Assembly (NCBI GenBank): GCA_021613535.1 | Contig: CP075494.1 | Span: forward strand, 8,308,001-8,372,000 | Origin: Adineta vaga | Lineage: Eukaryota > Animalia > Rotifera | Direction of reading: 5' to 3' | DNA length: 64,000 nt | Shown here: one piece after another, positions 9,734 to 48,049 of the stretch | Numbering within the stretch: position 1 is the first letter of the stretch | Layout of the letters: each line of letters starts with the position of its first letter | Notes under the pieces: model-generated | The model's input: only the letters and a program-made list of their open reading frames with translations | The model's database searches: none | Told to the model about the DNA's origin: nothing | Translations under genes and position numbers: made by a program

Positions 9734-12700
9734 ATGTATCAAGGCAAACATAGCATCTTTCTTGTTATCATATTGGGTTTAATTGTTCATAAATATTATT
9801 GTAAAGAACAAACATACGATCATATACCAAACAAGCCAATACGTTTTCATGTTGCTGAATTCAATTTTGACCATGTGTCAGATGTTTATGCAATAACATT
9901 ATGGATTTTACTTGGTTCATTAGCTAAAGTTGGTACGTATTAATTGGATTGAATGAAAGCAATTTTCAAATCGAATTTCTTTTTAGGTTTTCATTTATCA
10001 CATCGTTTAACTGAAAAATTTCCGGAAAGTTGTCTTTTAATTATTCTTGGTTTAATTGTCGGTGCACTTCTTTATGTTACTCATTTAGCTGAACAAAAAG
10101 CTTATGTACTCAATAGTGAAACATTCTTTCTATTTCTTTTACCGGTAAATTTAAGTACACTGTAATTTTAAAGAAGATCATTTTGTTAGAAAAATGAAAA
10201 AGTATTCAAGTTTTATATAGACTTGTTTTTGAAAGTGATTTAGTCAAAAAACTCACATAAGGTGATATCATAAAGATATTTAGATAAGGTGTGATTTACT
10301 ATTTAAAGATTACGTATTATGTAACTACTAAAAAGTCGTTCTCTTCCTAAACATGAATCATAGAAATCAAATGATTTATAATAAAAAGTACTTTCTCCAC
10401 CTACCCTCAAGAAAATATCAGGAATTATCAAAATTTCTATCATAATGTTCTGATAAGCAAATCATCGATTAGTCTTGAAATAGAATGAATATAATTTTTA
10501 TCGAATTAAATACATCTTTTATGTTATTTTACAGCCCATTATTCTTGAAGCTGGTTATTTTATGCCCAATCGACCATTTTTTGATAATCTTGGTACAATT
10601 TTATTACTTGCTATAGTTAATACATTATTCAATACAATTTGTATTGGTCTTACACTATGGGGTTTTCAATTTACACCCATTTATGGTGGTACTCAATTCG
10701 ACATGTTACCTTGTCTTGTTTTTGCTGCACTTATCTCAGCTGTTGATCCAGTCGCTGTCTTAGCAACATTTACAGAAATTCATGTCAATGATATGCTCTA
10801 TATTGTAGTCTTTGGAGAATCATTGCTCAATGATGCCGTTTCTGTTGTTCTCTATCGTATGTTTGAATCATTTGCTAAAATTGGTCAAGCTAATATCATT
10901 GTAATGGATGTTGTTTTGGGTTGTTTATCATTTTTTGTGGTGGCACTCGGTGGTGTCTAATTGGTATCATATTTGGAGTTATCGCATGTTTCACAACGAA
11001 ATTTACTGAACATACACCTGTTTTAGAACCATTAATTATTCTTGTTTATGCTTATTTAGCTTATCTAACATCAGAAATGGTGTCTGTATCAGGTATATTA
11101 GCGTAAGTAGATCATTTTTCGAAAATCTCAATAGAATTAATGGAGAAATTATGTTGATTTTAGTATTACATTTTGTGGTATGGTTATGAAACAGTATGTT
11201 TCATTTAATATTTCCAAAAAATCGGATGCTACAACTGAATATGTTCTGAAAATGTTATCAAGTATTATGGAAACAATTATATTCATGTTTATGGGTTTAT
11301 CAACTGTTAGTGATAATCATTCGTGGAATACAGGTTTTGTTCTAATGACTCTTCTTCTTTGCCTTGTCTATCGAGTGATTGGTATGTAAAACTAGGTGAA
11401 AAGAAAAGTTTCAAATACAATTGATTTTTCAATTTGTAGGTGTTGCTATTTTTGCTAATATTGCAAATTGTTGGCGTTTACTTGAATTAACACGAATTGA
11501 TATGTTAATTATGTCTTATGGTGGTTTACGTGGCGCTATTGCATTTGCATTGGCTTTAGTTTTAGATGAAACAAAGATTGAACGAAAAAAAGAATTTGTT
11601 ACTGCAACCATTGCTGTCGTTTTCTTTACAGTTTTTCTACAAGTAAGAAAGAAGATATCATTCTTGAATTAAAGTACATGCTTTAAATAGGGTATTACTA
11701 TTGGTCCTTTGGTAAAATTATTGAATGTGCGACGAAAACAAATTGAAGAACCAACAATGTCTGCAAAATTAACAAATCGAGTAAAGAAAGAGTATCATTT
11801 TAGTTTTTAAGATTCTTATTGCTTTTTGTTATAAGATGATGGATCATGTGATGACTTGTCTCGAAGAAATATCTGGTAGTGGTGGTAGTCATTCATTACG
11901 TGATCGGTATGAGTTTACACACACAAAAAAACATACAACAAAATGATCGTCTTAAACTAATTTTTATTTAGAATTCGAAACTTCGATCGAAATTATTTTA
12001 AACGGTGGTTATTACGTGAAACACCACAAGAAAAAATGGATATTAAATTATTGCAAACATTTAAAAAGATCAGTACACAATCAGCAATGCGAGTTCATGA
12101 TACATCTCGAGGTCTTGTACCAGCAGCAACAGCTGCTGCGTATTCATCTGGATCATCAAATAATTTAAAATTAGATCGACGATTCGAAAATGTTTCCGAG
12201 TTAATTGCGGCAAAGTTTGTTTAACTAGTTAGTGAGAAAATATTGTATGTCATTTTGTTTGATTTGTTGTAGTCTACCTGAACATACTGTACCCGATTTG
12301 ATGTTTTTTGAAAATCGTGGCGGTGATCATCATCATGATGATGCACATATGCATCATTTTCTGGATTCGAATCTTTATAGTGCCAGGCCTAGGGTAAAAT
12401 AGAAAAGAAAGCATACCGTACTCTATCAGTAATCTACTATCACTGCCAAGATTGTTTCTTAATTCATGTTATTGAGAATTCTATATGAGAGAGTGCAAAG
12501 TTAGGTTATCATGTTTTGTAGTAAACTGTCTTTCTATGTGAGATACGATATATGAACATATTCTCAACTATTCTTTTCATTTTAGGCTGCTATTCATCTT
12601 CGAAATCAAGATGAAACTGTTAGTTCAGATGATGGAGCACAGAATCGTTTTGAAAAGTCTTATCATCATCGTGATCATAGATATTTACCATCACGACCTG

Positions 12701-32629: not shown

Positions 32630-32877
32630 GAAAAACTCTTATTCATTCTTCTCCTTCTTCTTCCTGATACACAAAATGAATTTTGGAATGTTCTTATCTC
32701 TGACTTCGTTTACTTTGAATTTCTTTCTCGTTTTACATTACATTTTTGTTTTTTGAGATTGTCATTTTTTAGCTCTAGTACCTCTTTTGCGAAAATATAC
32801 ACAAATTAACTAGTCAGTACATATTTAGAACACTCTTTTAGATTTGAAAGAATATATTTTTCAACAATATTAATAAA

Positions 32878-35800
32878 ATGGCCTCCAATAAAGTAAATAT
32901 TGATTTCTATGTATTTTAATGTTGTATTTTGATTTTATTCATAGGAAGCATTAGCTCTTGTAGTTGATATTGGTGTTGGTATGTCTCAAGTCGCACCAGG
33001 ATTCGATTCACCATTACAAATCACAAGTGATATTCTACAAATGATCGTTCAGAGAAAAGTAATACAAAAATATTAGGTCTCATTTTCTTTCTACTACAAC
33101 GATTCTTCTTGTAAAATAGATGTTTCAACAGAGTAAAGATGAATTAGCATTAGTCTTGTATGGTGCTGACGAAACAAATAATGAATTAGCTGATGATGAT
33201 AATTATCAGAATGTCAGTGTTGCCTTTTCATTAGCACCTGCCAATTGGCATTTATTTGAAGAAATCCAAAAAATACGACCAGGCAACAATCCAGCTGATT
33301 GTAAGCATTTAAAAAGAACGGGATACAATGATAATTACAAGTTTAAAAAAATCGCTTTTTCTAGTAGTCGATGCTATCGTTGTTGCTGCCGATCATCTTC
33401 GTCGAGAAACAGAGTATGTTTTAAATAACTGATGTATGAAAAAGAAAACAAGTTGCTTTCATTTAGAGGAAAACGTGGTTATGCTGCTAAACGTGTTTTA
33501 CTATTTACAAATGCTGCTACACCATTCAGTGATCATAATCTTAAAATTATTCTTGAGTCACTTCGACGACAAGATATTATCGTTGATGCCATTGGACCGA
33601 CATGGGGTCAACAACAAGAGGAAGAAGAACAACAACAACAGCAGCAGCAAGAGAATGATGCACCGGAAAATTCAAGTGCCCATCCCGATTCACCGATGCA
33701 CACAAACGAACATAGTAAAGAAGAATCGGCTAGTGCTCGTCCAACCACCAATGGTCATGATCATCATCAACAGCATCGAAGTCCAAAAAAGCCATTGACT
33801 CAACAACAACAAACCGGTATTCGTGTTATTAGTGATATTGTCAATACAACAGATGGAACTCTATTTACATTCCGGTAAGATAATATCATTAGAGAAAAAA
33901 CAGAACTGCATTCTTTATTGTAGTGAAGCACTAGGTATTCTCAGTGTTCATCAATCCAAAGTTGTTAAACCAACAGCAACAAAATATGTGATGCAATTAG
34001 CTGATCTTAAACTACATATCTGTACTTATATACAAGTAAAGCTAGAGAGTTAAATATAGTCTTTCTCTGAATTTTCTTGTTTTATTATTTATTAGGTAAA
34101 AGATAATAAACCCGGAATATTTCGTTTGAAAAAAGTCTATGCACGTGATCCAACAACAGAAATTAAAGTTGATCGTAGTCGTTACACGAAAGATGAACAA
34201 GATGAAGAAATTGAAAAAGAAGAGCTGACAGATGGATTTCGTTATGGAACAACATTTGTACCTATTACAAAAGAAACATTAGAAGATATGAAATATCAAA
34301 GTGAAAAATGTTTTTCAATTATTGGATTTTCGGATGCAAAAACGGTTAGTCCTAATGAATATTTCTCTATTGAATTTAATTGCTCTTTTAGATGCAACGA
34401 AGTCTTTATCTAGGCGATACAGTTTATGAAGTTATTGCCGAACCAGCATATGAGGTAAATTTGTCTTTACTATTCCGATTGTGATATCTTTTTCTTCGAT
34501 TTTTCTTTCATTTCAGGAAGAAGCTCAAGTTTTCACCGGTCTTGTTCAAGCTATGTATGAAACAAATTCTGTCGCTATTGTTCGTAAATGTTTTAGTGAA
34601 AGAAGTTCACCTGAATTAGGATTTTTACGTCCACATATTGCTCATGATCATATTGTAAGTAGTAAATCAAGAATACTGTTTGTTTCGTCAAAGTAATGTT
34701 CGTCGATCTTTCTTTTTAGTGTATGTATTATGTAAAATTACCATTTGCAGAGGATGTACGTGGATTTGATTTTGACAATCTTGATGCGATAAAACGAAAT
34801 CAACCAAGCGAGGAACAATTAAAAACAATTGATAATTTAATCACAACAATGGATTTAACACACGCTGATCGAGGGTTTGCATAATTTGAATTTAGAAAAA
34901 AATCCAGTGAATAAGGAGAGAAATTTTCTAGAGGTGAAGAAGCATTTCAACCAGAACTAATGTCAAATCCATACATTCAACGAATGTTTCAAGTATGCAT
35001 TCCACTTACATGCTATTTATCTAGTTTAATCTAGAACATCTTTTTAGTCAATTGCTCGACGTGCTGTTACTCCTGAAGATCCATTATCATTATCGAATAC
35101 AATTATGGAAATGAATGAAACATTAATTCGATCAGTAGCGACGAAAAGTAAACGAACATTAGATGAACTTCATGATCAATTTGTCCTACAAGATACTAAT
35201 CGTCGACAGAAAATTACGACTGGTGATGCACTTTTTGGCAATAATGATATGTATGCTTAAGCAAACAAATTAAACACAAGACATTCTTCTTCTTTTAGTT
35301 CAGCAAAAAAAGTTCGCTATGAAGAGAATGGTGAAGAAGCGACAACTGATTCAACATCATTTGAAGCTCAAGCAGCTGCAAAAAAGAAAGCAGCATTAAA
35401 AACAGTTGGTACAGTGACACCAGTAGAAGATTTCAAGATTTTAATTGAACAAGGTTCACCATCGTTTACTGATGTATGTAAACAAATGTGTACACTTATT
35501 ATTGATCTTATCAATAATTCTCATGGTGATTCATTGTTCGAAAAAGCATTACAATGTGTTCAATGTTTACGTGAAGCATGTATTAACAAATTAGAACCAA
35601 AATTATTCAATGATTTCGAAGTTGTATTAAAAAAACAAGCAGCAGATATTGATGGAAGAAAAGATTTTTGGAAAAAACTTGTCGAAGGTATGTTATAAGA
35701 ATTACAAAATGAAGCTTTTATTATTAGGAGAAATATCTGAAACACTCCTATTTTCGTTTTCAGAAAAAATCAGTTTAATAACCAGTGAAGAATGTATTGA

Positions 35801-37883: not shown

Positions 37884-38180
37884 AAAGAAAAACCAACTTT
37901 TCAGTTCTGTTTCATTGAACTACTTTACGTAAACCAAATAAACTGACTTTTTAGATATTATTTTAAAATTTCAACTTTTGTGTATGCAAGACTCTGTGCC
38001 ATAGTGAAATAAACAAGAGATTGATATCTTATCAGTAGAACTTTCACGATTAGTAGAGTATAGATTCGTTTTCGAACGAGCAATTAAAATAGAGGCGCAT
38101 CTAGAAAAAAAAGCATTTTCGTTCAAGTCTTCAGTATAACTTTGGTAATTTCAAAGAATTTATCTGAACTATTAATAAAT

Positions 38181-39010
38181 ATGTGCGAACAATCGAATTT
38201 TTTTAATTGTAATTCTTTCGATGATTGTATTGAAAATGATGATTGGCGACCAAGTCAAGAATTATTATTGACACGCTTTGCAGCGATTGAATATTCTGAT
38301 ATGTTTCGAACAATCAATCAAGATTGTAAGTCACATTAACTGAATGGTAATTTTCTCCTCAAGTTTTTTCGTACTAGATGGTTCATTTTACCATCGGCAA
38401 ACAACATCACCATGTATACCTGATAGACTTACAGAAAAAGTTCATCGACGACAAGAACGATTTATGGATTGGCTTTATACTCAAACTTCTCAGCAACTAT
38501 CATCAAATACATGTAGAAACAATCTCTTTTCAGAACAAAATATCGAAACATTGAAGTAAATCTTTCTTTGATTAATTACTTTACAGTCACTTGAAAAACT
38601 ATAAATTTAGAATTACTCATCGAAAGAAATTATCTGCATGTCATATTGATGATGTAGTAAGTATTTTGTTTTATCAAAAAATGATGAAAAATATTGTTTA
38701 ATTTATAAATTAGATTATTGACTTTCTTGTTAAACAAATTCAATATCGATTAAGAGATCTTATTGATCCGTGTGATGTATGTGACTAGCTGCATTGGTTC
38801 GAACTTTATTTTGTCTATATTTAGTATCCTGATGTACTCAATTGTGCTAGAATTCTTATTATAGATTTATTGAATCAGTATCCTTCGCTATGTACTGAAG
38901 ATGTGATCAATCGAGTGATTGGAATGATGAACACACCGTCTTGTTATCCAGTAACACCTCCATCTTCAAGTTTTTTTCCAGTGACGAATTCTACCACTTT
39001 GAATTATTAA
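38181..39010 (+). CDS. Uncharacterized multi-exon helical protein
   Basis: About five exons join in frame across short GT-AG introns, from MCEQSNFF... to ...YPDVLNCARILIIDLLNQYPSLC...STTLNY*. AATAAA at about 39096. No family recognised. Confidence 0.6.
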
Positions 39011-39287
39011 GTGAAAATGATCTTTACGAATGGCAGTAAAAGATTTCGATAGGCTATGTCTGAATTAAAAATCATAACTTTTATTGCTATGCAGAAATAA
39101 AATGTCATCAGTTCGAATAGACAAATAAACAAAAGAAGGAAAAATTAACAGTTGAAACAAAATCCAATAGACATATACAGACAAAAGATAATTTCGAGTT
39201 TTCAATTCTTCTGTACTGTCGGATAAATAAAAAAACAAACAAATGAATAGATATGTTCATGGTTTATATAGGATAGAACTAAATAAT

Positions 39288-42215
39288 TTACAAAGATTCA
39301 AGAATGAGTTGCTCTTGAGGATATAATTTTAACTGTTCGAATGTATCTGTTGGATCCAATGTTGTTAACTAAATACAGAAAAAGAAGATTAGAATATAAT
39401 AATTTCAATAGCATACATCTCGTTTAGGATAAGTCGTCAGAAGTTTATATTCGCCGAGCATTCGTCCTTCACTTGTCAGATAATCGAATAATACCTGAAG
39501 AAATAGGAAGATAGATTTGAGTTTGAATGTAATTTGAAGAGTTGTTTTCTAACTCACTTGAAGATTATCTTGTAAACGAAACCGTCTCATAAGTACACCT
39601 TCATTATCAGGTAAACGAATTTTCAAGCGACTAATATTCTTTTCCGTTTCATCGGGCTCATCTGGTAGACGAGCTTTTGATTCTTGTTTTTGTTGCTAGA
39701 AAGAAAAATCAAAGTGAGTTGTTTAGCCTTTTCCTTTTATGCAAAAATTTCTTACCGATCTCTTTTCAATTGATAATTTCGTTTCTTCTTCTTCTTTTTT
39801 TCGTGCTTCTTCTTTAGCTAGATCAGCTAGACGTGACTGTTCATATTCATCTTCTTGCTGTCTTTTAAGATTTTCACGTTTTTCTCTCATTACTTCTTCA
39901 TCCATATCACGTAATCGTTGTTGTTCGAATGAATCATGTGATTGAATAAGATTCAATAAAACTTCAGCTGGTGTACTTTTACCTTCAATAATGTTTATTA
40001 ATTCTAATAAACCACGAGAACGAATAACAATCAATAATAATGGAAAAGCATCCTTTTCCATTGAACCAACACGCTGCGCACATTGATTACCTACACATCG
40101 TCGTAGTGTTTCTAATAATCTAAAACAAATACGAATAAGAATAGAAAACAACTTTCAAAACATACCGAATTCGATTTACATCCGATGTCACATCCCAAGC
40201 CCAAAAAGTATAATTATTTGCTAAATATTCAATAATTGAATCAAGAGCTAAAACCTGAGAACAGAATACATTTGCACAAACAGAATGATCATTATGCAGA
40301 TAGATCGCTAATGGACGTCTCTAAAAGTGTAAATAAACGATGATGGATCCTTATTCGATATTGAATATTTACATTATGTATAGAGGTGTAGAGTGAATGT
40401 TGGATTGCTTGATCTAATGAACCCATATATAGTATTAGACCATTTGAACCATAACGTGAATGGAAAATACGTGAGAAATGTTCGAGAGCAAAATTTTCAT
40501 CTGTAAATTCATCGGGAACTAATGAAAAAGACAAATATTTATAAATCTCTTGATTAAATTAAAAGTCGATTGCTTTTCACATTACAAGTGATACGATAGT
40601 CTGAATGACCGAATCTTAACTTACTAAGTGATTGTCGACCTGTCATAAGTCCCGTATTGACTGTTGTTGCTGAAGTATTATGAGATAAAATAGTAATATC
40701 ATCATCTTCATAGTTTGTTGATCCTATATCACGATCAATTTCCATATCTTCATCTTCACTACGACTTGTGCCAAATATTAATTGCTAATTATAAAGAAAA
40801 GAAATTAAAATTTTCAAAATTGATTTTCTTATTCTTACATTTGAATCTCGTTGTGTAGTTGGTAGTTTTTGATTTGATGATGTATCTGAATGACGAACAA
40901 CTAATTGTCCATGTGGAGCAATCGATGTCTGACGTAATTCATCCTAAAAATTTCCAAATATGCATATCAAGTACTATCTGTTAATTATCTTACTGAATCT
41001 TTTGCACCTAATAAACCTTGCCATATTTGTTGTTTCAATGGTATATGCGCTGAAGTTTCAATTTGTTTTTTCATCTAAATATTGAAATAGATGTATATTC
41101 GTTCTTGTAAATAAACAACGATATACTTCATTAATCGTTGTGTTCGAATCTAAAACAAGTTTATATGGAATTACTGAACCAGTTTTATCTTCACATAGCA
41201 CCGTTAATGGAAAATCTTTTGAATTATGAGATGATGTAGTGGTATGATTTTGTTGTCGTCTAAAATCATTGAAAACGATATATTCAGATTAAGAAAATCA
41301 AATGGAATTTATTACTCGGTCGAACCATTTTCTATCGATGATAGATGAATAGTATTTTCTAATGGAAGATGAAGATCTCGTAGTTTCGTCTAGAAGGAAA
41401 AAAAGAGTTTCTTGTTATAAGAAGATTTTATGTGATATACATACTCGGTCATCGTAACTCTTCATTTTCCAGTTGAGAAAATCTTGTTTCTGAACAGGAA
41501 CATGAAGTTTTTCAGCTATTTTTTCACGTAATTCAACTAAAATACGATTCCTATAGGAAACAAAAAGAAAATGAATTCTAATACATACGAACTGTTTCAT
41601 TGTCAAATATATCGATTCTTTCGGTTTGATCACAATATTCAATTGTAAACTGTAAAGTACGTACTAGAAAGAAAAACAATTATCTTTTATTATCCATCTA
41701 AAAAGACACGCTGGTCTCTTTTTACTAACCTGGTCCATTGTTTATTATTGAAGTAGCTCCAGCTATTGTTCTTTGTCGTCCAGATATAGTTTTAATAATT
41801 TGTGGTTCATCTGAATCATCCAGATCATTTGCATCTGATTGACGTTTGTTTTTATTACTATTTTGATTCGTTGAAGTGTTTTCTACTGATGTCATCTGAT
41901 CATTGCTTGTTTGTTGAACTGGTACTGTTGATTCGTTTTCATTTCTATCACCAATTCCTTCATGAACTGCTTGAATAGCATTCTAGAATTTGCATTAATA
42001 AAAGATTAAGACCAAAGAATGATGATGATGATGATTAATTCATTCATTCTTACCATTAAATTCCATTCATGTTGTTGTAGAATATGAATACATTCCTCCA
42101 TATTTTCTAAACCCGTACAATCCTAGAACATACTGAATTTAGATAAGAAAAGAATTATAATTATGAAATTTACTTGAAAATCAGATAAGATTCGTTCACG
42201 TGATTCTTCACTCAT
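39288..42215 (-). CDS. FAF1: FAS-associated factor 1 (UBA, ubiquitin-like x2, UAS, coiled coil, UBX)
   Basis: UBA: MSEESRERILSDFQ|DCTGLENMEECIHILQQHEWNL. UAS: FCSQVL...FWAWDVT and FPLLLIVIRSR. Coil: QQEDEYEQSRLAD. UBX: LPDEP...RLKIRLP...RRFRLQD...LLTTYPKR...LYPQEQLILE. Confidence 0.92.
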
Positions 42216-42357
42216 CTCTTTTCTTTTATAAATAAACTGATATCTAAAAATATCACGTTTATTAATAATAAAGAAATAAAACAAATGATTTATTTTAATT
42301 ATTTTTTCTGTAGAATAAAAATAATGTTTATCACAGGTATCAACGAATTGAAATTCA

Positions 42358-43810
42358 TCATTTAAGAAATCTTGGTGGAGGACGATTAACAGTAGGCGTC
42401 TGTCCATCATCATCGTCATCATCATCAGTATCACTATCATCGGGATTCGTGTTCAATTGTCGGAATGTATTGGATAAATTATCTCCAATATTAGAAAATA
42501 AACTATTATCACCATGTTGTGAGTGTCGAAAACCATGAGGCAAATGTCTGTCAAATTCCATTAAAGGCATTAATCTTGTAGATCGTTGAAAATGATGATC
42601 ATGATCATATCTGCCTTTAGGAGTTGCACTATACATATCGTACGGATTTTGTTTCGCATCCATTTCCTCTTGTATTTTCTATTGAAATGAGACGAAAAAT
42701 CAAAGAAATTAAAGATAATCTTTTCTTTAAGTAAAACTTTACTTTCAATCTTGCGTATGCTTCCTCGCCATTGTCAAATTTATCTTTAGCTTCAATTAAA
42801 CGACATAGAAATTCATCCACAACTGGTTGTTTTGTTGAACCAACAATAATACGATCAAATAAGTAATTACCAGTATTAGATCTATATACAACAAGTAGTA
42901 ATGGATAATGTTCTGCAGATTCTGTACCAATTTGTTGTTCAATAGTTATTTGTGTGAATGCTTTTTTATACATTTCATTTAACCTGAAATAAATAATAAA
43001 AATATGTTTATTCATTATAATTGCTTGCAATTTTTCTATCAATCTGACGAAATTCAAAAATGCATCATCAAAACTACAACTAGTACTGTTGATGAGTGTG
43101 AAAATTGAATATTATTTAATTCTTCTTACATTTGTCCGTTGGATTCAAATGTGACATCCCATGCCCATAAAACATAATTCATTAATAAATAATCAATAAT
43201 TTTATCATTACATAAGAGTTGTCTACAAAATAAATTCGAATAAAGACTATTATCATTATTCACATAGATCATAAGTGGTCGACGCTAAACAGAAAGCAAT
43301 TCAAATAAAATGAAAAAAAGATAAAGATATATTTCATTTACTTCTTTAATATCATTCAAATCAAATGCTCCTTTTAAAGCATCAGAAAGTGAACCGATAA
43401 AAACGATTGGACATGAATTATATCGACGATTTAAACATGATTTTAAATGTTCAATACCAACTATTTCATCTTTACATCCATCGGGAACTAGAATATCAAA
43501 CTCAAAAGTAGATCGATTTTTCGATTCATTCTTACTTAAATGATCTTCATGTTCGGGTGGTGCATCCATCAATTCATTATAGAATTCATCATCGGTAATA
43601 TCATTACTTTTATTATCATCAGAATCAATGTCATCTTGTTCAATATCGGATTCAACCTGATAAAAAATAAATCAGATCGATAAGAAATTAATCGTTTATT
43701 TACTAATTCAACGGCATCAGTTTTGTTCTAAATAATATCAAAATTAAGCAATCGAATAGTTGAAACATTTGAAAACTTACCGATATCTCATTATCTGCTT
43801 TTTCGGCCAT
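42358..43810 (-). CDS. FAF1-like paralog retaining only the UAS domain, with a novel acidic/His-rich tail
   Basis: PDGCKDEIVGIEHLKSCLNRRY...FIGSL, RRPLMIYVNND...FCRQLLC...NYVLWAWDVT and YPLLLVVYRS parallel the UAS block of the adjacent FAF1. No UBA, UBL or UBX seen. ATG at 43810; stop TGA at 42358-42360. Confidence 0.75.
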
Positions 43811-43978
43811 TTTAAATCAATCTAGAAACAGAAGGTTGATTTATTACATGATAGTTGAGTTTCCTTTTCTTAATTTAATGATTTTATCAATATATGTATA
43901 TATATATATGAGGAAAAAGGAAAACAACTTTTTAAAAATAATAATAATAATAACAACAAACATATCAACATGCTGTTC

Positions 43979-44728
43979 TTATTCAAAGACAACGACCAAA
44001 TCTTCTTTATGAACAATCTTAATTTCTTCAAGTAATAAATGTGATAATTCTGCCGCTGTATGTGTGACAAAATGACATGTCTCTGATGAAATGGGTGGTC
44101 CCGAAAGTAATGAAGGAAGATTATTTACACCAGCATCTGGTAATGAAGGTATTGTAGTTGAAGATAGAGATTTACTTAAAGTTTGTCTTAAATGATCATT
44201 CTGAGAATTAAAACCGTTTGCATTTGCATTTGATGGATGAATACCACTGGCTCCACCATTGCCGACATCAATTAATTTCGATAACATACCTTCAACAATA
44301 AATGCCATTTTAGTTTCTGCAGTTTCAGTTGGTTGAACATCTAAATAAAACGAGAGAAGAAAATCAATGAGATGAATTAATTAAATCTTTATTATCACTA
44401 GTTGTTAGTGTGTCTGGTTTGGGTTCACTAATTGTGACTAATGGTGGAGGAAAAGGTGGATACGAAGATGATTCACCGAATGATTGTGAATTGGAAATTA
44501 CTGGTGTTACAGAAAGATTCTTGCGACTATTTGAATGACTCAAAAGTCTATTTAAATGATGAAAAATAATGAATAGAAGATAGAATAAGAATATTCGATT
44601 ACTTACGGTGTTCGATCAGTAATTTCTGATGAATGCTCTGAATTTCTTATGCCTGTATAATCACCAAGATTTCCATTTGTATGTAATTGATCTTGGCTTT
44701 TTAGACACCACGAACATATATTACCCAT
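43979..44728 (-). CDS. LAMTOR1: Ragulator subunit LAMTOR1/p18, 3 exons
   Basis: N-terminal MGNICSWC (myristoyl/palmitoyl-type), dileucine DRTP|LL, central KLIDV, and C-terminal IKIVHKEDLVVVF matching the p18 tail. Confidence 0.82.
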
Positions 44729-45116
44729 TGATTTAATTTAACCGAAAGATAATAAAAAAATAAAAAGAAAGATTATCGACTTATTCGATTCGTAAGACAA
44801 GACAAACAGCTGTAATAATAATAATAATAATTCAATTCAAGTAGGATTGTGTATGGCTACGATTTCCACGTGATAGTTGTTACGCAAGCAAAAGATGTCG
44901 GTAGAGATCGAATCAAGTGCGCATCAAATTATTTAAATCGAAGAAATTGTCTATATTTTTGTTTATAAATTTAATAAAAATATTTCATTCAAATTAAACA
45001 TCCCTTTTAGTTTCCAAATCGTATCAAATGAACAGTATCATCGTTTATAAACAAAGTTGCTATATATATATATATATATTACTCCGCATCAAGAACTTCT
45101 TCAGACCTGTAAATAC

Positions 45117-45187
45117 TAGCGGCACCACTGGTGGACTACAGAGGGCTCAGTCCCGGCTTTAGAATGAAAATCCTAGCGGTGCCTCTA
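45117..45187. mobile_element. Degenerate 71-bp MITE-like element
   Basis: GC-rich island. The left end TAGCGGCACCACTGG matches the reverse complement of the right end (TAGAGGCACCGCTAG) at 12/15 positions. Internal GGGCTCAGTCCC. No clear TSD. Confidence 0.5.
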
Positions 45188-45537
45188 CTTGCAAATAAAG
45201 ATATCTTTGATCGATATAGTATATATAATTTCAATAGAAGAAGGTGAAGATGAAGGTGAAGGTGTGTGCGTTAATCTTTAAAGATGAAGTCGTCCTCCAA
45301 TAGGCTTTACGAGAAGATTATGTACAACAACACTGAGGATGTACTGAAATTGTATTTCATGTTTTGAAGACAAATTTTGATATACTTTGTACTAGAGTCT
45401 TTTAGAAATAAAATCAAACTAATTCATTCTTTTATTATGTATATTGAATGAAAAGAAATAAAAAGAAAAGAATCGAGATTTGAAAATTAAAAAGTTTATA
45501 TTATTTCAATGTTATAATGCTTCGTTGTTTTTTTTAT

Positions 45538-45696
45538 CTATTTCGGTGCTTCCGTTTTTGATAGAGCAGCACTAGCACCTCGTGGACATTTACATCGGTC
45601 ATCGATAGGTACATCTTTTAATGCTTGTTCAATATGTTGTCCACAACCTTTCCATGTTGGTTTGCCACATGTATCGCAATCCGTTTTCATACACAT
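45538..45696 (-). CDS. 52-aa intronless Cys/His microprotein (CxxC-WxGCGxH-CxC, putative zinc-binding); not in the ORF track
   Basis: Translation is MCMKTDCDTCGKPTWKGCGQHIEQALKDVPIDDRCKCPRGASAALSKTEAPK*. A-rich start context (AACAATG), an upstream TATA element and a downstream minus-strand AATAAA-like tract. Confidence 0.8.
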   Translation of the reverse strand: MCMKTDCDTCGKPTWKGCGQHIEQALKDVPIDDRCKCPRGASAALSKTEAPK

Positions 45697-45807
45697 TGTT
45701 TAACGTAAGTAGTCGTAAGTGTTTGAATAAAATTTAAAATAAAACTTCTTCTTCTTCTTTTTTCTCTGATGCAGTAGTCAGCAGTATGCTCGTTTAGTTT
45801 ACGATGT

Positions 45808-45815
45808 TATATAAA
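45808..45815 (-). promoter_or_regulatory. TATA-like element upstream of the 52-aa microprotein
   Basis: Minus strand reads TTTATATAA about 110 nt upstream of the ATG at 45696. Confidence 0.4.
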
Positions 45816-46365
45816 GGATAGAAAGAAGAAAAGAACACAACATGTCAGTGCCCCATTTTTTCCATTCTTCTCTGCCGATAGGGGTAGTATGAAATGAGAC
45901 ATTACAAAGATGCAATTATTATAGAGGAGAAAAAAAGAGGTCGTTTACCCTTGGATTATGACTGACGACATAATAAATTTGTAGATTATATCTCGGAAAA
46001 TTACAGAACGAAAGTAAAATCTTTTTTCTCGGCTATTTTTTCTTCACTTAAAAACGATAGTAATAAACGATAATCATGCAAGGAAGGAATAAGAAAGAAT
46101 TATGGTTCGTTCAAATTTTCAATGGATTCATTATACCGAAGCAAAACTGATTAAGTCTTTCAGATCTATCACCGGTTGTTTTTCAAAAGCACAAAAAAGC
46201 AACTGTGGTTCTATTCACAAAGAGTTCCTCGTTTGTTTTTCTACACGATTCAATCAAAGAATATTTTAATTGAGAATGTTAAGAAAATTCTGAAGATTTG
46301 TTTATTTGAATAAAGATTAATATTAAGAAGAAAAAATACGAATGTATTGTGTACAAAACATTTGT

Positions 46366-46834
46366 TCAGAACCAATCAAGATCTGGTATATCAGCAAATG
46401 AGAAATTCTTATCACCTTTCCATGCCCAATAAGCAATACGTAAATGATAAAAGCCAGGCAAAAATACCAATGCTCCAATAACTATTAATGGCCATGTACG
46501 ATCGCTATACTAGAAAAAGAAAAAAAAAGATTTCTTATTCAATAACTAGAAACAAAAGATATACTTGTGTTTCAATTCGACCAGTTAACATTAGTGCACC
46601 TAATGTAATCATCACTGTTCCAATAAGAAATAGAGCTGTAGCTAAAATAATAGCATGTATAGGTATTTTTGCTGGTGTTTCTTTGAACTAAAAGATATAA
46701 ACAATAATAACGACATGCATAGTTATACATCTTCGATGGTTGATTTACCTGTAAATCTGTATATTGTTTCTCTTCTTGAAGTCGATAGTATGATGAAGCT
46801 GTTTCGTCATCTTTCTTCGGCTTAAAGATATGTC
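46366..46834 (-). CDS. TMEM230: Transmembrane protein 230 (start codon lies further upstream, unresolved)
   Basis: YTDLQ|[23 protein letters not shown]...[41 protein letters not shown]. Stop TGA at 46366-46368. One possible first exon starts at 46953. Confidence 0.88.
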
Positions 46835-48049
46835 TAAATAAGCATAATAGGATACATGCATATATGCGTGCTAGATTAGCTTATTATAAATTATTAGAAT
46901 GTTTTCCTATAACCAAATCGAGTAAGTTACAAAGCATGAATGCAGATGAGCATCGATAGCACAGCGTTTACCTTGTAAAACGATATACTGAGGTACTTTA
47001 AAGAGAATCAGTGATAGACTTTACATAGGCGGCTAGCAGTAGAAATTGATAAGTGAAATATTGATCTTACCTTATTGGACTTCTGAACCGCTAAAGTACA
47101 AAAAAACAACAAATGATATTTTCTTTAATAATCGAGAAAATCAAAAAGAAACTGAACAGATGGATCTTTATCTTCTTTTAAAATCCACTATCAGTAAATT
47201 TGGATCATTTGAACTTGCTTTGTTGATAAAAGTCTCAATATACTTTATTTTATTATTGAATTAGATGTATATATTGAACTCTGGTAAATAATTTTATCGA
47301 GAAAAACACGTATTGCAAATATACGGTATCATTTACAGGTATTTATTGGAAAAATGTAAGTTACTGACAGATACTTTTGACATGTCTATCGTAAGAAAAC
47401 ATACATGTACTATGTACGTAATATAATTTATCATAAACGATTGAATCTTACCGGTTTTTTCTTATCTTTATGAACATTTAAGTTAGAATTTTGTTTTTCT
47501 TCTAATTCAATATTTGCTGGCGAAATCACTTCTGTTGGTTGCATATTTACAGAAAATCTCGATGAACTTAATCACTTGTTTTACATACACATACAAATTA
47601 TAGATATCTAAAACAAAATTAGAATTGAAATTTTTTCTTCATAGAAACAAAAGAAAAAACAAAGATGATTCATTCTTCTGCTTTTCAAAAAGAAACAAGA
47701 AAAGAAAAAACTACTGCACACACGATAAAATTGAAGAAGGAAGAAAACACGCATTGAAGCAAAGCAAAAACGAAAAAAAGAATTGTTGTATGTTATCACA
47801 TCACAACGAAGAAATACATATGTTTGTTTGACTAGGAAATATAGAAGATATAAAGCACAACACCACACACACACACACGCATACAAATAAATGAATTGTT
47901 TCTCGGAAACACACAACGAATATCTGACAGTGAAGGGAGAAAAAGGGATGCAAAGCAAAAGAAAAGAAAAACGTCATTTGTTTATAAATGAGAGAAAGAG
48001 CAGAAATGACTTAATGAATATTGCCAAATATGACTTTAAAAAAACAAAT

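What the first reader, a model, noticed from the sequence alone, without database searches (positions are those of the whole stretch)
42215..44728. Three-gene operon-like unit LAMTOR1 > UAS-only FAF1 paralog > FAF1, with poly(A) signal fused to an unpaired splice acceptor
Seen: the stop-to-ATG gaps are only about 170 and 140 nt, and both junctions have the same layout on the minus strand. Junction 1: AATAAA (43845-43840), 16 nt, YAG acceptor (43823-43822), ATG 43810. Junction 2: AATAAA (42263-42258), 12 nt, TTTTTAG (42245-42244), ATG 42215. I found no convincing GT donor at a normal intron distance and no room for a promoter. Established: 3' cleavage occurs about 10-30 nt after AATAAA; bdelloid rotifers use spliced-leader trans-splicing; C. 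elegans SL1-type and Oikopleura operons have near-zero intercistronic spacers. Inference: a polycistronic pre-mRNA in which upstream 3'-end formation coincides with, or competes with, trans-splicing of the next cistron. I do not know of a description of this arrangement in rotifers.
Basis: partly seen in the sequence, partly recalled or inferred. Interest (0 to 1): 0.85.

Follow-up and report, generated by a model that had tools for sequence, protein, structure and literature searches.

The report
Conserved spliced-leader operon in bdelloid rotifers
Three genes of the rotifer Adineta vaga sit head to tail, about 150 bases apart, and most likely share one promoter and are cut into separate mRNAs by spliced-leader trans-splicing, as in sea-squirt operons; the papers I could search report no operons in rotifers.

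Summary
All coordinates are correct. The genome is Adineta vaga. The unit is LAMTOR1-like > UAS-only FAF1 paralog > FAF1. Gene order, 70-257 nt stop-to-acceptor spacers and a pyrimidine-YAG|AT acceptor before each downstream ATG are kept in the homoeologous chromosome and in other bdelloid loci (23 of 24 junctions read AG|AT). Most spacers lack a credible donor. Promoter-like boxes are conserved only upstream of gene 1. The genome has 60 spliced-leader-RNA-like genes. Intron-free contigs from other bdelloids start with the leader tail at the gene-3 acceptor (CAAGAG) and, weakly, at the gene-2 acceptor (GAG, where the same species' genomic sequence has TAG). One 3.4-kb spliced contig carries genes 2 and 3. 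Upstream contigs run to about 4-14 nt of the next AG. The 'fused AATAAA' is not conserved (1/14, 4/10), and no poly(A) site was seen. Verdict: probable SL-resolved operon (0.78), possibly with no intercistronic DNA. This scan's notes already report similar operons elsewhere in this genome.

The parts
44853..44904 (-). Conserved promoter-like boxes upstream of gene 1 (CTACCGACATCT 44904-44893, CACGTGG 44872-44866, AGCCAT 44858-44853)
   Evidence: The CAC/TG(C/T)GG box and the GACATCT-type box align across 9 bdelloid loci; these boxes are absent from all 24 spacers. Promoter function is inferred.
43979..44728 (-). Gene 1, LAMTOR1-like (210 aa; introns 44606-44548 and 44398-44341); A. vaga I4U23_024551
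   Evidence: ESM Atlas features give LAMTOR clusters at 0.90; UniRef names two bdelloid orthologues LAMTOR; no Pfam hit, so the identity is likely, not proven.
43822..43978 (-). Junction 1: gene-1 3' UTR running into the gene-2 acceptor (157 nt stop-to-AG); hexamer AATAAA 43845-43840; acceptor AG 43823-43822, first exon base 43821
   Evidence: Orthologous site reads TAG|ATTTT in L059 and GAG|ATTTT in L010, same species.
42358..43810 (-). Gene 2, UAS-only FAF1 paralog (345 aa, 6 introns; lacks UBA, UBL and UBX); I4U23_024550
   Evidence: Tree places it as a duplicate of bdelloid FAF1 older than the A/B homoeolog split and the Didymodactylos split.
42244..42357 (-). Junction 2: gene-2 3' UTR running into the gene-3 acceptor (114 nt stop-to-AG); AATAAA 42263-42258; acceptor AG 42245-42244, first exon base 42243
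   Evidence: FAF1 contigs L051 and L052 start CAAGAG|ATT and AGAG|ATT; L010 spans this junction unprocessed.
39288..42215 (-). Gene 3, full-length FAF1 (681 aa, 15 introns; UBA-UBL-UAS-UBX); I4U23_024549
39080..39085 (-). AATAAA in the FAF1 3' UTR, candidate end of the unit
   Evidence: Read from the sequence; use not tested.

Best explanation
A spliced-leader-resolved operon. RNA polymerase II starts at a promoter upstream of the LAMTOR1-like gene and reads through all three genes (inferred). Each downstream gene gets a capped 5' end when the bdelloid leader is trans-spliced onto the unpaired pyrimidine-YAG|AT acceptor 9-39 nt before its ATG (shown in relatives for gene 3, weakly for gene 2; inferred for A. 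vaga). The upstream gene's 3' UTR runs over the polypyrimidine tract of that acceptor, so little or no intercistronic DNA is left (contigs reach to about 4-14 nt of the AG; exact poly(A) site not shown). The upstream 3' end is then made either by cleavage under a weak, variable hexamer (AATAAA, AATAAG, AATTAG), which removes the acceptor, or from the product released by trans-splicing. In that case the two events compete on each precursor, as proposed for Ciona and C. elegans SL1-type operons (inferred; about even odds against a short real spacer).
For: Order and short spacers are kept on the homoeologous chromosome and in the metagenomic loci wherever the contigs reach a junction. Acceptor AG|AT in 23/24 junctions against 12/79 cis introns; best donor at or below the 3rd percentile of true donors, or no GT at all, in 18/24 spacers; L037 J2 has no GT at intron-like distance. 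60 SL-RNA-like genes in the genome, control 0, leader ending CCAAGAG|GT. Leader-tail starts on intron-free contigs: L051 6/6 nt and L052 4/4 nt (gene 3), L010 3/3 nt and L011 (gene 2), L014 7/7 nt (gene 1). Same-species control L059 has genomic TAG at the site where L010 has GAG. Dicistronic spliced contig L010, and a second one inferred from a shared 3,485-nt contig length. Upstream contig ends near the AG. Conserved boxes only upstream of gene 1.
Against: No poly(A) tail in any contig. Gene-2 leader evidence rests on one discriminating base. Dicistronic contigs can be assembler joins of overlapping RNAs. Linkage is relaxed in Didymodactylos carnosus (no gene 1 within about 1 kb of gene 2; J2 about 1.1 kb), and the middle gene has decayed in one A. 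ricciae homoeolog. The loci are related, so counts are not independent. Gene 1 itself is trans-spliced in one relative (L014), so a leader alone does not prove polycistrony.
Confidence: 0.78

Rival explanations
1. Overlapping but independent (or hybrid) transcription units: genes 2 and 3 have their own promoters inside the upstream gene's last exon or 3' UTR, and the junction is an outron removed by SL trans-splicing.
For: It explains leader tails, unpaired acceptors and L059's 44-nt genomic 5' extension equally well. L010 could be an assembly join. A conserved ACATCTGT element sits about 35 nt before the J1 AG in many loci and resembles part of the gene-1 upstream box. Internal promoters feeding trans-splice sites are described in cestodes and tunicates (PMC12582326).
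Against: The gene-1 promoter-like boxes are absent from all 24 spacers. Spacers go down to 70 nt and are filled by 3' UTR. The ACATCTGT element is not kept in this window. Two dicistronic contigs in different samples.
Confidence: 0.14
2. The genes are cis-spliced into fusion mRNAs (LAMTOR1-UAS, or UAS-FAF1), as gene predictors modelled in A. steineri, Rotaria and Didymodactylos.
For: Annotated fusions P0314, P0319, P0320, P0322, P0324 and P0212 exist.
Against: The GTs in the last codons of gene 1 score -5 to -10, below every true donor. The fusions drop the near-invariant C-terminal residues of gene 1. Intron-free contigs show gene 1 with its own stop and 3' UTR and gene 2 with its own start. 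The Didymodactylos fusion uses an odd GTCGCA donor.
Confidence: 0.04
3. Ordinary compact neighbours: each gene has its own promoter and the AGs are chance or close a cis-spliced 5' UTR intron.
For: The genome is compact and AT-rich; a few spacers hold a passable GT (10th-37th percentile in 6 of 24).
Against: No donor position is conserved, the acceptor is, and leader tails are joined there.
Confidence: 0.04

Closest known systems
Ciona intestinalis operons (Satou et al. 2006, PMC1488885)
   Same: Co-oriented close genes, downstream genes receive the one general leader, upstream 3' end abuts the acceptor, unresolved dicistronic cDNAs occur, and AATAAA is mostly absent (16/18 there; 19/24 junctions here).
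   Different: Exact poly(A)/acceptor coincidence is mapped in Ciona but not here; different phylum and leader sequence.
C. elegans SL1-type operons (as described in PMC1488885 and PMC12582326; the Williams 1999 paper was not held)
   Same: Little or no intercistronic DNA, resolution by the general leader, AATAAA just upstream of the acceptor as in this window's two junctions.
   Different: AATAAA is not conserved across bdelloids; nematodes also have the SL2 class with a spacer of about 100 nt, for which I saw no sign here.
Chaetognath operons (Paraspadella gotoi, PMC12460157)
   Same: Related gnathiferan-side lineage; housekeeping genes under 250 bp apart; no operon-specific leader.
   Different: Junction architecture not described in the passages read; different leaders.
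Bdelloid SL trans-splicing (Pouchkina-Stantcheva and Tunnacliffe 2005, via PMC1925144 and PMC2481426)
   Same: Same 23-nt leader class, on more than half of transcripts.
   Different: Operons are listed as 'not determined' for Rotifera in PMC2481426 Table 4.

Membership tests
SL-resolved eukaryotic operon | Co-oriented genes with very short spacing | tested here: met
   168 and 142 nt stop-to-ATG; 70-257 nt stop-to-AG in 24 junctions.
SL-resolved eukaryotic operon | Organism has SL RNA genes | tested here: met
   60 matches, control 0, leader followed by a GT donor and a conserved body.
SL-resolved eukaryotic operon | Downstream cistrons are trans-spliced at an unpaired acceptor | tested here: met
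   In relatives only: gene 3 with 6/6 and 4/4 nt of leader tail, gene 2 with 3/3 nt and a same-species genomic control. Not shown in A. vaga.
SL-resolved eukaryotic operon | Polycistronic precursor exists | tested here: inconclusive
   L010 is a spliced contig with genes 2 and 3, but it is an assembly, not a single molecule.
SL-resolved eukaryotic operon | One promoter; no internal starts | not testable with these tools
   Only indirect: conserved boxes upstream of gene 1 and none in the spacers.
Ciona / SL1-type (no intercistronic DNA) | Upstream poly(A) site abuts the downstream acceptor | tested here: inconclusive
   Contig ends about 4 nt (L049) and 11-14 nt (L013) before the AG by cross-species alignment; no poly(A) tail seen.
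C. elegans SL1-type | Canonical AATAAA just upstream of the acceptor | tested here: not met
   Present in this window but conserved in only 1/14 J1 and 4/10 J2 loci; not enriched genome-wide over a control hexamer.
C. elegans SL2-type | Operon-specific second leader and spacer of about 100 nt after the poly(A) site | tested here: inconclusive
   The same leader tail is seen on genes 1, 2 and 3, and 3' UTRs fill the spacer, but only the last 3-7 nt of the leader are visible.

The most novel reading that the evidence does not exclude
[quoted passage not shown] This unit would be at least as old as the bdelloid genome doubling and would give a third animal lineage with this layout after tunicates and nematode SL1-type operons.
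Probability: 0.5. Interest if true: 0.75.

Novelty: new member of a known kind. Interest (0 to 1): 0.62.

Why it matters
Trans-splicing has been known in bdelloids since 2005, but the papers I could search show no operon for them. A conserved operon with named junctions makes three questions testable in a culturable animal: whether operons follow trans-splicing in each lineage, how an upstream 3' end and a downstream acceptor share one site, and whether operons help recovery from dormancy. It also has a practical side: public bdelloid annotations fuse these genes in at least five species, so other gene models are probably chimeric too.

Tried and rejected
Window genes were searched exon by exon by reference; I left out any search with a joined model of my own, and full-length proteins used were database entries returned by the tools. 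The 19-nt leader pattern came from memory; it was checked by 60 hits against 0 in the control and by the start of L014. The look-up of the A. vaga protein in the look-up of encoding contigs found nothing. Rfam found nothing in 38000-47000. Pfam and PDB sequence searches did not identify gene 1. The J1 element is not a genome-wide motif (1 match). AATAAA enrichment before acceptor-ATG sites was not found. The bacterial promoter scan is not informative here. Not held: the 2005 rotifer SL paper, Flot 2013, Williams 1999 and the 2017 Terminon paper; from memory the last describes multi-ORF co-oriented retroelements in bdelloids and may mention polycistronic processing. L012, L049 and L053 5' ends are uninformative (adapter or only AG/G). 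P0343/P0344 are a genomic gene-1 contig, not a dicistronic RNA.

Full report
Observation. The gaps are 168 and 142 nt from stop to ATG, or 157 and 114 nt from stop to the acceptor AG. The genome has 100.8 Mb in 6 contigs, and the genes match Adineta vaga I4U23_024551, 024550 and 024549. Aligning those database proteins to the window gives 2, 6 and 15 introns, median length 59 nt over the set. Gene 1 is LAMTOR1-like by language-model features and by the names of orthologues; Pfam does not detect it. Genes 2 and 3 carry the FAF1 UAS region. A tree places gene 2 as a duplicate of bdelloid FAF1 that predates the A/B homoeolog split (long branch, unnamed outgroups).

Unpaired acceptors. I built a donor matrix from 79 real introns. 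The best GT at intron-like distance in the window's spacers scores at about the 1st percentile of true donors. Across 14 J1 and 10 J2 loci, 18 of 24 have a best GT at or below the 3rd percentile or none at all, and no donor position is conserved. The acceptor is conserved: a pyrimidine tract, YAG, then AT in 23 of 24, against 12 of 79 cis introns. These loci are related, so this is conservation, not 24 independent trials.

Conservation of the unit. The homoeologous region on contig C2 has the same three genes in the same order with the same acceptors. The 14 metagenomic loci show the same order wherever the contigs reach a junction, and so does Rotaria sp. Silwood1. There are exceptions. In Didymodactylos carnosus gene 2 has no gene 1 within about 1 kb upstream and J2 is about 1.1 kb. 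In one A. ricciae homoeolog the middle gene has decayed while both acceptors remain.

The leader. A pattern recalled from memory finds 60 loci in this genome and none in the reversed control; the leader ends CCAAGAG and is followed by GT and a conserved body. Intron-free contigs from other bdelloids, which I take to be RNA-derived, begin with that tail: L051 (6 of 6 nt) and L052 (4 of 4) on FAF1, L014 (7 of 7) on gene 1, L010 (3 of 3) and L011 on gene 2. L059 and L010 are 99.8% identical in the gene-2 coding sequence; at the J1 acceptor L059 reads genomic TAG then ATTTT and L010 reads GAG then ATTTT. That is one discriminating base, so gene-2 evidence is weak. Gene-3 evidence is better, but I have no genome for the species of L051.

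Co-transcription. L010 is a 3,405-nt contig with the spliced gene-2 coding sequence, the 157-nt spacer and the spliced FAF1 coding sequence. A second contig of 3,485 nt appears to carry both proteins, judged from cluster records; I could not fetch it. Assemblers can join overlapping RNAs, so this suggests but does not prove a precursor. Upstream of gene 1, boxes are conserved in nine loci; they are absent from all spacers.

The 3' ends and the AATAAA. Gene-1 contigs L013/L014 end about 11-14 nt before the J1 AG, and gene-2 contig L049 ends about 4 nt before the J2 AG, by alignment to related species. The upstream 3' UTR therefore overlaps the acceptor region, unless these ends come from unprocessed RNA. 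No poly(A) tail was seen. AATAAA itself is present in 1 of 14 J1 and 4 of 10 J2 loci. At J1 a looser hexamer, AAT(A/T)A(A/G), is present in 10 of 14 against 5 of 79 cis introns; at J2 a CTAAY branch-like motif is present in 5 of 10 against 4 of 79. Genome-wide the AATAAA-acceptor-ATG pattern is barely more common than a control hexamer (644 and 592). The element may be a weak poly(A) signal, a branch site, or both.

Mechanism and rivals. The best reading is one promoter, a three-gene precursor, and leader addition at each internal AG, with the upstream 3' end made at or near that AG (0.78). The main rival is internal promoters with outrons (0.14), which only capped-start mapping can remove. 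Cis-spliced fusions, as annotated in several species, are unlikely: the needed donors score below all true donors and separate contigs exist.

What is known. Ciona operons lack intercistronic DNA and mostly lack AATAAA; C. elegans SL1-type operons have it (PMC1488885). [quoted passage not shown] An earlier table lists rotifer operons as not determined (PMC2481426). Several literature searches found no rotifer operon report, but four key papers were not held. Earlier notes of this scan report similar operons elsewhere in this genome, some citing poly(A) tails at the acceptor; I did not check them and do not count them as evidence.

I searched window genes exon by exon by reference and left out any search with a joined model of my own.

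Verdict. A real, conserved, probably SL-resolved three-gene operon; a known kind of system in a phylum where I found no report of it. Interest 0.62.

Noticed in passing
window 54670-54543, minus strand: WDR46/BING4-like gene and a GIDE/RING (MUL1-like) gene are about 125 nt apart with an acceptor just before the ATG; 123 nt in A. ricciae (L057). On C2 the WDR46-like gene is missing but a piece like its 3' UTR remains before the second gene. Second candidate operon.
   Followed up: partly
window about 32630-32880, plus strand: SLC20-like phosphate transporter and Ku80-like gene are about 250 nt apart with a TTTTAG|AT acceptor before the ATG in both homoeologs; C2 has AATAAA just before it. Third candidate operon junction.
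   Followed up: partly
window about 48050-47540, minus strand: Ras-like gene to TMEM230-like gene: long conserved 3' UTR ending at a TTTTAG|AT site, kept in A. ricciae. The whole stretch from about 57000 to 39300 is co-oriented, so larger units are possible.
   Followed up: partly
L015-L034 (G000, e.g. C5 9.88-9.93 Mb): SL-RNA-like genes occur mostly as divergent head-to-head pairs about 160 bp apart, some in arrays; 60 copies with small leader variants.
   Followed up: no
L057/L058 about 10750-12370: The UAS-only middle gene appears decayed in this A. ricciae homoeolog while both acceptors are kept.
   Followed up: partly
P0314, P0319, P0320, P0322, P0324, P0212: Public annotations fuse neighbouring genes of this unit in A. 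steineri, Rotaria spp. and Didymodactylos; probably prediction errors at operon junctions.
   Followed up: partly
window 45538-45696, minus strand: Small single-exon cysteine-rich ORF (52 aa) conserved at 70% on C2, no clear Pfam family.
   Followed up: no
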